Notes under the pieces: model-generated | Told to the model about the DNA's origin: nothing | Databases searched by the model: none | The model's input: the letters and a program-made list of their open reading frames with translations, nothing else | Position numbers and translations under genes: made by a program | Assembly: GCF_031769215.1 (NCBI RefSeq) | Contig: NW_026781977.1 | Location: 1,116,001 to 1,180,000 of the forward strand | Length of the DNA stretch: 64,000 nt | Reading direction: 5' to 3' | Origin: Ylistrum balloti | Lineage: Eukaryota | Part shown: one piece after another, positions 260 through 37,521 of the stretch | Layout of the letters: each line of letters begins with the position of its first letter | Numbering within the stretch: the first letter of the stretch is position 1

Positions 260-23805
<23,546 letters not shown>

Positions 23806-28860: not shown

Positions 28861-29848
28861 TTCTATTTCTGTAGTTGGAATAATTTCACTTACACTCGAG
28901 TCCGTTGATTACACATCTCGGCGAGGGGCAGCCATTCGTCATCACTATATAAAACATGTCAAAATGCACACATTAAAATGAAAATATGACTCGGCGGAAC
29001 TCGCATAGATCGATGGAAAACGCAACTAATTTCATGAGCGAAATTACGAGGAAGTAGGCTCTGCACACTTAAAGATAAGTTTATTTCAGGTTCATGACTT
29101 ATATGGAAGGCTCAAAAAAGAAAAAAAATTATACAAAATATTGAAATATTAAAAATATTACAGTCATTTTACATAGACCTCTTGCAAATGTACCTCATGT
29201 ATACAATTTGGAAATTATGTGATTGCAGTTCCAGTTCCGTTCCAGTTAGTAACAGTGATAACTCACAAAAATATTACAATAATGCGAACTTGTCACTGCC
29301 ATTGAAACGCAAATTAACAGTGCTTCGGCAACCTAAAATAAATTGAACGGTGCACAGATCTGATTTCTTTATGACTTGATGACAATGACATGAACTATTC
29401 TCTTTCTACTGATGATAAATGTATTTTTCATATCTACCATGTTTGTGTTCGGTACGAGACTGACGTCTGTGGTATTATACCATCCCTTGTTCCAACCCAC
29501 AGGGATCTTGTCAAAAACCTGACAAATCTCTGAAGTTAATTGTGAGGTCGTATTTCTGATTGACAATATAAAATAAATATTTTACCATTTTTCTGCTTTT
29601 CCATATTGTATTTAGGAGGAGAAAGCTCATAATATTTCTAAATATAAATTGCAATGTAAAGATGAAGTCTCAAATAAGTCCGTATGTTTTGCTTTCCACA
29701 CACTTCAACTGTAACGTAAATGAACCGATAGTGACCCCTGACCTCATTAAACATAACCACGAAGAGTAATAAAGAAGATATGAAAACGTGAGTAAATGAA
29801 TGCACGGCCTAAGGAAGACTGTAAAGGTCTCAATTCATATATTATAAA

Positions 29849-30123
29849 CCTAGGAGGCGACTGAGGAAAATTTTAAGTAATCGAAACAAATGGCACAATC
29901 TAATTGAGGATATGCACTAGCCCTGCAATTAAGTAAATTTCGTAAATTCCATACATGTGATAATTTTAGAAGCAAAAGTTCAAATTTTTATCCGGAACTG
30001 TGCAAATACTCTAATGAAATAAAACATGACAGACAGGCTGGTAAACCCCGCGGACTAATAGTCCAGCAGTGGTGTCTATCAGGTGAAATCTCGAAGATTC
30101 TACAAAAGGCGAACAAGTGAATA
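29849..30123. mobile_element. Truncated homolog of the hammerhead-bearing unit at 37108-37521
   Basis: Shares CCTAGGAGGCGACT and ACAAGTGAATA anchors at near-identical spacing (264 vs 267 bp), plus intermediate similarity. Confidence 0.6.
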
Positions 30124-34961: not shown

Positions 34962-36163
34962 TTTATAAGCTCACCTGGCCCGAAGGAGCATACAGGATAT
35001 CGGAAAATTTATGAGGTCATATTTTTAGAAACTTCAATACATCCATTTGATTTCCATCTTTTAAATGTTTGTCTATAACGTTACTGGGTTGTTTTTCGTA
35101 TCTTATAGTTTAAAATATCGAGGGTATTCTTTGTATTGTCATTTTTCGTGCTAACGTGTGTGTGCTTATCACTGTAACCTCATATCACTTACTATGTATA
35201 TGATATTTACACTTTCTTACTTATGGAATATATATGTATATTATTTTGCATTTTTATGCTCCTGGATCGAAAGGTCGGGGGCATATTGTTTTTGTGCTGT
35301 CTGTCTGTTTGTCTGTCTGTTTTTCTGTTGCCAACTTTAATCTTGCACGTAACTATTGCACGGTAAGAGGGATGGCTTTCATGTGTCCCTTTTTACAAGA
35401 CGTTTCTTGGGTACTAAAATTTTTTACCATATCACCTTGACCTTGACATTTGAAAGTAAACAAAATAATTACCAGAATGAATACAAATGTTTCACAAAGT
35501 GTACATGTAACATGTCTTACACGATTCGATTTTAATGTTCCACTTGTTGCAGTTTTTCATAAACACGTCTTTGTATTATTATTTTATCATTATTTATTTG
35601 TCATAAATAGAATTCCAATATCCAACTATTTACATCTGTTATGTTTTGTTAATGTATGTATATACATAAATATTATTAGAATTATATTAGAATTCATCNN
35701 NNNNNNNNNNNNNNNNNNNNNNNNNNNNNNNNNNNNNNNNNNNNNNNNNNNNNNNNNNNNNNNNNNNNNNNNNNNNNNNNNNNNNNNNNNNNNNNNNNNN
35801 NNNNNNNNNNNNNNNNNNNNNNNNNNNNNNNNNNNNNNNNNNNNNNNNNNNNNNNNNNNNNNNNNNNNNNNNNNNNNNNNNNNNNNNNNNNNNNNNNNNN
35901 NNNNNNNNNNNNNNNNNNNNNNNNNNNNNNNNNNNATCAAGTATGGAATGTAAGTGAAATACCTTGCTCAATGTCAGTATTTGCAGCCCATATCGCCTAC
36001 AGGATTTGAACATGATTGATACATTTAGGTGGTGCTACTGATGCTTCATTCTCTAGTAATTTTCTTCTTCCTCAGACTTAAATGGTTGACAATAAATGCT
36101 CAGTTGATTGACTGAATAGTTGAATTAGCCAGGTGAGCAAAGCAAATCCCTTGGGCCTCATGT
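34962..36163 (+). mobile_element. Helentron/HINE-like element spanning the gap, possibly with a nested second element at ~35251
   Basis: GCTCACCTGG (34969-34978) and CCAGGTGAGC (36129-36138), with a gggcctcatgtt end like the 27116 end; internal tttttatgctcc..(gtct)n start at ~35251. Confidence 0.55.
35699..35935. other. Assembly gap (N run)
   Basis: 237 N. Confidence 1.
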
Positions 36164-36660: not shown

Positions 36661-37107
36661 TCTTCTGTCAACAAGTAATAAATCCATAGCCATTATATAT
36701 TTGTTCATGTACTGGTATGTATCTGTTCTGCAAATGTTTGATCATCATATTAATTATTTACTACTATGAAACGTCATGACATTGATGTGCGAATTTCTAC
36801 AGGCTTTATAAAGAATTTCAGTCCACTGTGATAAATACATGATCCCTGTACTGTCTGTACAAAGTATACCACATTGGTAAGACATAGAATACGCGTTGAT
36901 ATTCATAAACGCGAACCTTTAAGAATGAACCTCTACTGCAACAGTAGAAACCATGATTTGACGACAGTCAATAGAAAGGAGAGTCGTATGATAAGTGTCG
37001 CGTATGGTCCTTTTCATTAATTGTAAGCTATTTGTCATTCAAATACCAGTATGTAAAATACTAAGTGCCAAGGACAGAGACACACATGCTTTTAAAGATT
37101 GTACAAT

Positions 37108-37521
37108 AGACACACAAGTGAATAGCACCTTTTAATAATTTAGATTAAGATAGAGTAGAGCCAAACAATGTGTTAAACTGCATCATACAGCTGTTTCGTC
37201 CTTCTAGGACTCGTCAGTGATGCTTAGAACCTAAATTTTGAAGCCTAGGAGGCGACTAAGAAAAATCCAAAGTGATCAAAAGGAAAGTCAAAATCAAGAC
37301 ATGGAGGTGCAGCAGCCCCAAAATTAGATAAAGTTTGTAATTTTCATAAATCAGATAATTTTAGAAAAGCGTCAAATTCATGTTTATTTTCCTTACCGTG
37401 CCAGTATTCGAGACTGAATTAAAACGTGGCAAGCAGGTTACGGCAAACCTCAAGGACTTAAAGTCTACCAGCGGTGTCTTCTACCACCTGCTATCTTGTA
37501 CGAAAGACACACAAGTGAATA
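37108..37521 (-). mobile_element. Retrozyme/Penelope-like non-autonomous unit, 397-bp period, carrying a hammerhead ribozyme
   Basis: 17-bp direct repeat AGACACACAAGTGAATA at 37108-37124 and 37505-37521 brackets the hammerhead. Confidence 0.65.
37180..37223 (-). ncRNA. Minimal type I hammerhead ribozyme
   Basis: Minus strand: GCATCA CTGACGA GTCC TAGAA GGAC GAAAC AGCT GTA TGATGC. It has a 6-bp stem I, the CUGANGA core, a 4-bp stem II, GAAA, a palindromic ACAGCUGU stem III and a GUA cleavage triplet. Confidence 0.88.

What the first reader, a model, noticed from the sequence alone, without database searches (positions are those of the whole stretch)
37108..37521. Apparently intact self-cleaving hammerhead ribozyme inside a 397-bp terminally redundant unit (candidate bivalve retrozyme)
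Seen: the minus strand at 37223-37180 reads GCAUCA-CUGACGA-GUCC-UAGAA-GGAC-GAAAC-AGCU-GUA-UGAUGC. All catalytic core residues are present, stems I and II are fully paired, stem III is a self-complementary ACAGCUGU, and cleavage is predicted after GUA (37186/37185). An exact 17-bp direct repeat 397 bp apart brackets it. Known: minimal type I hammerheads with short palindromic stem III occur in Penelope-like elements and metazoan non-LTR retrozymes, where they can act as dimers and yield small circular RNAs; I recall mussels among the reported hosts. Inference: this is a monomer-length genomic copy of a non-coding ribozyme retroelement, possibly a family not yet catalogued in this species.
Basis: partly seen in the sequence, partly recalled or inferred. 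Interest (0 to 1): 0.82.

Follow-up and report, generated by a model that had tools for sequence, protein, structure and literature searches.

The report
Old hammerhead-ribozyme retroelement copy (retrozyme-like)
This is one old, probably dead copy of a 397-base non-coding mobile repeat that carries a small self-cutting RNA motif; such elements are already known in animals, and this genome holds thousands of copies.

Summary
Rfam finds one type I hammerhead at 37223-37180 (minus), 34.1 bits against a cut-off of 34. The direct repeat is real: 26 nt at 92%, 397 nt apart.

The unit belongs to a dispersed family in this 648-Mb genome, with over 5,800 first-look candidates. The hammerhead core has 3,238 exact matches, against 0 for the reversed control. 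Family anatomy is a 5' body, then 1 to more than 20 hammerheads in 45-nt tandem, then an ~80-nt tail.

Nearly all sampled copies end at the same 3' point but start at variable 5' points (290 to 643 nt). The window's "terminal redundancy" is a 423-nt copy of a 397-nt unit. This is the footprint of reverse transcription from a fixed start on a longer-than-unit RNA, circular or multimeric, as proposed for non-LTR retrozymes and Penelope-like elements.

The window copy is about 10% diverged and its hammerhead probably survived by chance. With one ribozyme it cannot release a circle by itself.

Not shown: RNA, cleavage, the reverse-transcriptase partner and the host taxon. Other notes of this scan had already reported hammerhead arrays and retrozyme-like loci elsewhere in this genome. 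Verdict: a new member of a known kind, of low to moderate interest.

The parts
37180..37223 (-). Type I hammerhead ribozyme motif: helix I 6 bp, helix II 4 bp with loop UAGAA, helix III 2 bp with palindromic loop AGCU. All 44 bases match the family majority.
   Evidence: Rfam RF00163, 34.1 bits, E 1e-4; sequence; 0 of 44 differences from the majority of 30 copies.
37185..37186 (-). Predicted self-cleavage site, after GUA (between 37186 and 37185).
   Evidence: Position counted on the sequence using standard hammerhead numbering. Cleavage itself is not tested.
37224..37495 (-). 5' body of the unit (unit positions 27-298), non-coding, about 10.7% diverged from the family majority.
   Evidence: Alignment of 30 copies; no ORF of 70 aa or more here; no tRNA or other Rfam family.
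37099..37179 (-). 3' tail of the unit (positions 343-423). It ends at the family's fixed 3' junction ...GTACAA followed by TCT(+0-5).
   Evidence: 26 of 30 copies end at ...CAA followed by TC(T), after which the flanks diverge; 40 further genomic matches to the tail stop at the same point.
37092..37098 (-). Ragged last bases of the insertion (TCTTTAA), which still match the unit's head-to-tail junction.
   Evidence: Comparison of 3' flanks with the junction seen in longer-than-unit copies.
37496..37521 (-). 5' terminal redundancy: a second copy of the last 26 nt of the unit, present because the insertion (423 nt) is longer than the unit (397 nt).
   Evidence: 26 nt, 92%; the same sequence is continuous across junctions in copies of 432-643 nt.
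29846..30077 (-). Older, diverged relative of the unit body (69% identity to unit positions 43-281), without a recognisable hammerhead.
   Evidence: blastn; only one Rfam hammerhead in the window.

Best explanation
The stretch 37092-37521 (minus strand) is one old insertion of a non-autonomous, non-coding, hammerhead-bearing retroelement family, of the non-LTR retrozyme or Penelope-dependent kind. A family member is a ~270-nt body, one or more 45-nt type I hammerheads, and an ~80-nt tail. Inferred life cycle: source loci with two or more ribozymes are transcribed. Neighbouring hammerheads pair through their palindromic helix III and cut. Unit-length RNA is ligated into a circle or stays multimeric. 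A reverse transcriptase supplied in trans, most likely from a Penelope-like element, starts DNA synthesis at a preferred site ~87-90 nt downstream of the cleavage site. It then copies a variable length, often more than one unit. The window copy is such a product: 423 nt, which is 1.07 units. This explains the 26-nt repeat at its two ends. It has only one ribozyme and is ~10% diverged, so it is a dead-end 'monomer derivative'. Its intact hammerhead is best explained by chance survival among thousands of copies. Shown here: the motif, the family, its anatomy and the end pattern. Inferred: transcription, cleavage, circularisation and the identity of the reverse transcriptase.
For: The hammerhead is confirmed. 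The family is large and dispersed over many contigs, with copies at 79-88% identity and 5,806 first-look candidates. There are 3,238 exact core matches against 0 in the control. One DNA run shows summed depth about 10^5 times that of the unique flanks at the hammerhead and 10^2-10^3 times over the body. The anatomy of body, tandem hammerheads and tail is seen in L030, L031, L033, L035 and L036. The 3' end is fixed while lengths run from 290 to 643 nt with no break at unit length, and flanks are unrelated between copies. Four sampled copies carry two hammerhead positions one unit apart (L008, L012, L016, L030), and C137 holds about 2.2 tandem units. Two adjacent array hammerheads fold with the 8-bp intermolecular-type helix III, z = -4.3. 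There is no ORF and GC is ~0.37. The genome encodes several lineages of RT + C-terminal GIY-YIG proteins. Published descriptions match: PMC7229834 (mussel repeats of 350-390 bp), PMC4209133 (dimeric helix III, longer-than-unit reverse transcription) and bioRxiv 10.64898/2026.07.22.740005 (monomer derivatives, consensus lengths of 51-972 bp).
Against: No RNA data could be obtained: only one DNA-type run holds the locus. Transcription, cleavage and circles are therefore untested. No reverse-transcriptase homology lies next to any of the 36 hammerhead loci. None of 17 sampled RT/GIY-YIG loci carries a hammerhead or the family's tail, so the partner is unidentified. No target-site duplications stand out (mean longest shared word 5.2 against 5.0 in the control). 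Covariation across copies is weak (6 pairs with double changes against 3.0 +/- 1.5; 28 of 500 shuffles reach it). RNAalifold finds almost no shared structure. The 30 copies were chosen for similarity to the full query, so the length distribution is biased towards long copies.
Confidence: 0.75

Rival explanations
1. The unit is a solo pseudo-LTR, or a 5'-truncated end, of an autonomous Penelope-like element rather than a separate non-autonomous family.
For: Penelope-like elements carry hammerheads in their terminal repeats, insert as partial tandems and often have a 30-40-bp extra 'tail' (PMC8557442, PMC4209133). Several copies here are about 26-38 nt longer than one unit. The genome holds many RT + GIY-YIG ORFs.
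Against: tblastn with three reverse-transcriptase proteins from this genome finds nothing in the 36 hammerhead loci or the window. Upstream flanks of copies are unrelated to each other. Sampled RT/GIY-YIG loci have no hammerhead (Rfam at E up to 1 on the five 10-kb loci; a motif and blast scan on 16 of the 17) and no similarity to the tail. The helix sizes (I 6 bp, II 4 bp, III 2 bp plus loop) are those of the 'canonical metazoan' motif, not the minimal Penelope variant defined in PMC4209133.
Confidence: 0.1
2. It is a SINE mobilised by a LINE, for example tRNA-derived, and the hammerhead is only a passenger.
For: It is short and non-coding, with a fixed 3' end and 5' truncations. The 5' body contains three small hairpins and a ...TTGCCA stretch that look faintly tRNA-like.
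Against: ARAGORN finds no tRNA in 18 copies. Rfam at E up to 1 finds only hammerheads plus one chance-level snoRNA hit elsewhere in locus L011. No poly(A) or simple-repeat tail exists at the 3' end. Copies longer than one unit are common, which ordinary SINEs do not produce.
Confidence: 0.06
3. It is satellite DNA spread purely at the DNA level by unequal exchange or segmental duplication, and the ribozyme is an inert relic.
For: The 45-nt hammerhead arrays clearly grow by tandem DNA expansion inside units. Most dispersed copies have decayed ribozymes: roughly 3 of 30 still look intact by eye (L001, L009, L011) and only L001 and L009 match the majority motif at every base.
Against: Copies lie singly on many different contigs with unrelated flanks. 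They share one precise 3' end while their 5' ends vary. DNA duplication does not predict this pattern.
Confidence: 0.05
4. It is a domesticated ribozyme: this intact hammerhead is kept by selection to process a host transcript.
For: 0 of 44 hammerhead bases differ from the majority, while the body differs at 10.7%. Conserved intronic hammerheads are known in amniotes (cited in PMC7229834).
Against: At 8.5-10% decay per site, about 1-2% of copies keep all 44 bases, so a family of thousands is expected to hold dozens of such copies. There is no second hammerhead in the window for a cis dimer. No exon was recognised nearby. No ortholog comparison was possible.
Confidence: 0.03

Closest known systems
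Metazoan non-LTR retrozymes (Cervera and de la Pena 2020, PMC7229834), especially the 350-390-bp repeats of the mussel Mytilus galloprovincialis
   Same: Type I hammerhead with 6-bp helix I, 4-bp helix II and a 2-bp helix III capped by a palindromic tetraloop. Unit of about 400 nt, low GC, no ORF and thousands of copies. Coexists with RT + GIY-YIG (Penelope-like) elements. Some loci hold head-to-tail units.
   Different: In this sample most copies are dispersed single insertions of 0.7-1.6 units rather than long tandem arrays of whole units. The ribozyme alone is amplified inside units into 45-nt arrays. Expression as circular RNA is not shown. Sequence relatedness to the mussel elements was not tested because no sequences were at hand.
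Penelope-like elements and their non-autonomous derivatives (PMC4209133, PMC8557442, bioRxiv 10.64898/2026.07.22.740005)
   Same: Fixed 3' end, 5' truncation, partial tandems that give terminal redundancy, a short extra extension in several copies, a hammerhead near the 3' end, and no clear target-site duplication.
   Different: No reverse-transcriptase or endonuclease ORF, and no detected similarity to the sampled coding elements of this genome. The hammerhead has the canonical metazoan helix sizes rather than the 'min-HHR' architecture (long helix II, no helix III).
Newt satellite 2, Schistosoma Sm-alpha and cave-cricket pDo500 hammerhead repeats (as cited in PMC7229834 and PMC4209133)
   Same: Short repeats of a few hundred bp with a type I hammerhead whose weak helix III requires dimer formation.
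   Different: Those are mainly long tandem satellites, or a SINE-like element in Schistosoma. Here the family is mostly dispersed, with internal ribozyme-only arrays.

Membership tests
Hammerhead ribozyme, type I (Rfam RF00163) | Conserved catalytic core CUGANGA ... GAAA ... and a non-G base before the cut | tested here: met
   CUGACGA, GAAA and GUA are all present and aligned to the model core.
Hammerhead ribozyme, type I (Rfam RF00163) | Score at or above the curated gathering threshold | tested here: met
   34.1 bits against 34, E 1e-4, so only just above the threshold.
Hammerhead ribozyme, type I (Rfam RF00163) | Three helices around the core, with helix I open | tested here: met
   Helix I is 6 bp, helix II 4 bp, helix III 2 bp plus the AGCU loop. 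The monomer's minimum-energy fold lacks helix III, whereas a natural tandem pair forms an 8-bp shared helix III.
Hammerhead ribozyme, type I (Rfam RF00163) | Self-cleavage activity | not testable with these tools
   Needs in vitro transcription. No RNA reads were available.
Metazoan non-LTR retrozyme | Short (150-450 bp) non-coding unit of low GC carrying a type I hammerhead | tested here: met
   397-nt period, GC 0.37, no ORF of 70 aa or more, hammerhead present.
Metazoan non-LTR retrozyme | Head-to-tail repeats, so that each unit is bounded by two ribozymes | tested here: not met
   This locus holds 1.07 units and one ribozyme. At family level the feature is partly met: L008, L012, L016 and L030 and C137 have two ribozyme positions a unit apart, but most sampled copies are monomers.
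Metazoan non-LTR retrozyme | Expressed as unit-length linear and circular RNA | not testable with these tools
   No RNA run holds the locus. The only run is DNA-type contigs.
Metazoan non-LTR retrozyme | Co-occurrence with Penelope-like elements in the same genome | tested here: met
   51 GIY-YIG matches were found. ORFs with RVT_1 plus a C-terminal GIY-YIG domain include L050 3470-5725.
Non-autonomous Penelope-like element or pseudo-LTR derivative | Fixed 3' end, 5' truncation and partial tandems or a 'tail' extension | tested here: met
   Whether the extension is specifically the 30-40-bp 'tail' is inconclusive, because lengths form a near-continuum with only mild clusters at 396-400 and 423-438 nt.
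Non-autonomous Penelope-like element or pseudo-LTR derivative | Sequence similarity of its ends to an autonomous element of the same genome | tested here: inconclusive
   None was found in 17 sampled RT/GIY-YIG loci.
tRNA-derived SINE | tRNA-related head | tested here: not met
   ARAGORN finds none in 18 copies. No tRNA hit at E up to 1 in 8 loci.

The most novel reading that the evidence does not exclude
The shared 3' junction, ~87-90 nt downstream of the ribozyme cut site, combined with copy lengths that run smoothly past one unit, may be the genomic footprint of a reverse transcriptase that starts at one specific internal site on a circular RNA and rolls around it. The family may also still have active source loci. 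If so, it would be a tractable model for how retrozymes are mobilised, a step that is still only hypothesised.
Probability: 0.15. Interest if true: 0.55.

Novelty: new member of a known kind. Interest (0 to 1): 0.25.

Why it matters
The locus is ordinary: a decayed copy of a known class of ribozyme-bearing mobile repeat. The family adds one more invertebrate genome where hammerheads make up a visible share of repeated DNA. Its end pattern offers a modest clue: the 3' ends are not at the ribozyme cut site, so the template for integration was not the simple cleaved linear monomer. For annotation, the family should be masked as a repeat and not scored as a functional ribozyme gene.

Tried and rejected
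1. tRNA-like head. The 5' body looked faintly cloverleaf-like by eye, but ARAGORN and Rfam at E up to 1 give nothing. Rejected.

2. Conserved rod-like or other shared RNA structure. RNAalifold on 28 copies gives -2.7 kcal/mol and no compensatory pairs. Counting pairs for three body hairpins plus the hammerhead helices gives only a borderline excess of double changes. Not claimed.

3. Target-site duplications. No excess over shuffled pairings.

4. Autonomous partner.
- The GIY-YIG search gave RT-endonuclease ORFs.
- They have no hammerhead and no tail similarity.
- No reverse-transcriptase homology lies beside hammerhead loci.

5. RNA evidence. Only one run holds the locus and it is DNA-type contigs. 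Laying it showed repeat depth and 45-nt 'goes back' joints from arrays elsewhere. It showed no empty-site allele and no contig spanning the insertion.

6. Host taxon. A low-complexity ORF gave no usable Atlas or Pfam signal, so 'bivalve' is unverified here.

7. Literature. A search for hammerheads in scallop, oyster or bivalve satellites found no paper joining the terms.

8. Whole-unit fold of the window copy. It is not more stable than shuffles (z = -0.97).

Full report
**Observation**

A scan of the whole window against Rfam gives a single hit, RF00163 Hammerhead_1, over exactly these 44 bases. It scores 34.1 bits against a gathering score of 34, with E 1e-4.
- Helix I has 6 pairs and helix II has 4 pairs with the loop UAGAA.
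- Helix III is 2 pairs closed by the palindromic loop AGCU.
- The base before the cut is the A of GUA, at 37186.

The direct repeat is 26 nt at 92% identity (37099-37124 and 37496-37521), 397 nt apart, and includes the exact 17-mer. The motif is not a chance match. The core pattern occurs 3,238 times in the genome, while the same pattern read backwards occurs 0 times.

**The family**

The window lies in a 648.5-Mb assembly of 1,372 contigs. The 414-nt stretch finds copies on many contigs at 79-88% identity, out of 5,806 first-look candidates. The 85-nt tail alone gives 1,943 candidates.

In the one public run that holds the locus (DNA-type contigs), summed depth is about 7 over the unique flanks. 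It is 10^3 to 10^4 over most of the unit and about 9x10^5 over the hammerhead bin. These figures are not copy numbers, but they show heavy repetition, above all of the ribozyme.

Of the first 100 listed core matches, 86 lie in clusters spaced by multiples of 45 nt and 14 are single. Five of the six array loci fetched, and L030, have the same layout: unit body up to the hammerhead, then an array of 45-nt hammerheads, then hammerhead plus tail. The arrays are therefore internal expansions of the ribozyme inside members of this family. One array locus (L034) shows no body or tail, so other contexts exist.

**Ends of the copies**

In 26 of 30 copies the homology ends at ...CAA followed by TC(T) plus 0-5 more bases (...GTACAA in most), after which the flanks are unrelated. 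The array loci and 40 further tail matches end at the same point.

Measured from this fixed 3' end, insertion lengths are 290, 345-388, 396-400, 407-438, 467-515 and 617-643 nt. There are only mild clusters near one unit and near one unit plus about 30 nt.

Copies longer than 397 nt read straight through the head-to-tail junction (...GTACAATCTTTAAGATAGC...). The window copy is 423 nt, so it starts 26 nt before the junction. That is the whole explanation of its terminal redundancy.

No target-site duplication stands out. The fixed 3' end lies 87-90 nt downstream of the predicted ribozyme cut. The integrated template therefore cannot have been a simple cleaved linear monomer. It was circular or multimeric, and synthesis began at a preferred site. 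This step is inference. It agrees with the model of longer-than-unit reverse transcription proposed for Penelope-like elements and retrozymes (PMC4209133, PMC7229834).

**State of this copy**

Against the majority of 30 copies, the window copy differs as follows:

| Region | Differences |
|---|---|
| Body | 29 of 271 sites (10.7%) |
| Tail | 7 of 81 sites (8.6%) |
| Hammerhead | 0 of 44 sites |

At 8.5-10% decay per site, 1-2% of copies would keep all 44 bases.

Among the 30 copies only L001 (the window) and L009 match the majority motif at every base, and most others have core or stem mutations. Across copies the hammerhead is somewhat less diverged (8.2%) than the body (13.8%; Wilcoxon p = 0.0003). 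Gaps, CpG sites and subfamily structure contribute to that difference. Covariation is weak.

The window holds no second hammerhead. This locus cannot be cut twice to release a unit-length RNA, and it has no partner in cis for dimer formation.

**How the ribozyme would work**

Folded alone, the 44-mer prefers a shape in which part of the core pairs with the helix III strand. Two adjacent units from a natural array fold with an 8-bp helix formed by the two ACAGCUGU segments (z = -4.3). This is the dimeric hammerhead described for newt, viroid and metazoan motifs (PMC4209133). Cleavage itself is untested.

**Who moves it**

[quoted passage not shown] However:
- None of the 17 sampled loci has a hammerhead or the family's tail.
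- None of the 36 hammerhead loci has reverse-transcriptase homology.

The partner is therefore unknown. More genomic DNA could not be fetched.

**Comparison with known systems**

By unit size, GC content, lack of coding capacity, ribozyme architecture and coexistence with Penelope-like elements, the family fits the metazoan non-LTR retrozymes (PMC7229834). A 2026 preprint (10.64898/2026.07.22.740005) describes 'monomer derivatives' that cannot transpose and retrozyme consensus lengths from 51 to 972 bp. It argues that such elements derive from Penelope pseudo-LTRs. The window copy is a monomer derivative in that sense.

The family differs from the textbook picture in two ways. It is mostly dispersed rather than in long arrays of whole units, and it amplifies the ribozyme alone.

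A tRNA-derived SINE is rejected. A solo pseudo-LTR of a coding element, pure DNA-level satellite spread, and a domesticated ribozyme remain minor rivals.

**Context within this scan**

Other notes on this genome had already reported 45-bp hammerhead arrays and retrozyme-like loci on other contigs. Two follow-ups concluded that the arrays grew by DNA expansion inside a small mobile element.
- My searches agree independently with that conclusion and with the neighbour-pairing geometry.
- Those notes call the host a scallop or bivalve. I could not verify the taxon.

**Verdict**

The locus is an old, inert copy of a new member of a known class.

Noticed in passing
L049 (G000:C422:243000-252999); further copies at C422:240415-261997 and C129:50248 and 67535: [quoted passage not shown] A 477-aa ORF with no Pfam match precedes it. 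It looks like a young Penelope-like element, yet no hammerhead is detectable in it at Rfam E up to 1.
   Followed up: partly
L030 1221-2288; L031 7543-8760; L033 7061-9819; L036 6607-8517: Members of the same family in which the single hammerhead is replaced by arrays of about 10 to more than 50 tandem 45-nt hammerheads, many of them decayed, between the normal body and tail.
   Followed up: partly
L034 6391-6792 (+) and 9209-9299 (-): Two hammerhead arrays in inverted orientation about 2.4 kb apart, without the body or tail of this family. They may belong to another hammerhead-bearing element.
   Followed up: no
window 29846-30077 (-): A 69%-identical relic of the unit body lies inside the region that another note of this scan reads as a PRY/SPRY gene. 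It points to an older wave of the same or a sister family.
   Followed up: no
window 35500-35999: A very AT-rich stretch (GC 0.14) lies 1.1 kb from the insertion. An ORF of 167 aa at 35450-35953 is probably a low-complexity artefact.
   Followed up: no
window 9005-10690 (-): A 561-aa ORF has weak, repetitive Pfam hits (BORCS6 C-terminal helix, spectrin-like repeats), and an overlapping 545-aa ORF lies on the other strand. It is probably a low-complexity coiled-coil or repeat region.
   Followed up: partly
L052 8952-9087 (+): A 136-nt fragment of the family (unit positions 240-374, 76% identity) lies 3.5 kb from a Penelope-type RT ORF on the opposite strand. It is probably a coincidence, but it is the only place where the two were seen within 10 kb.
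   Followed up: partly
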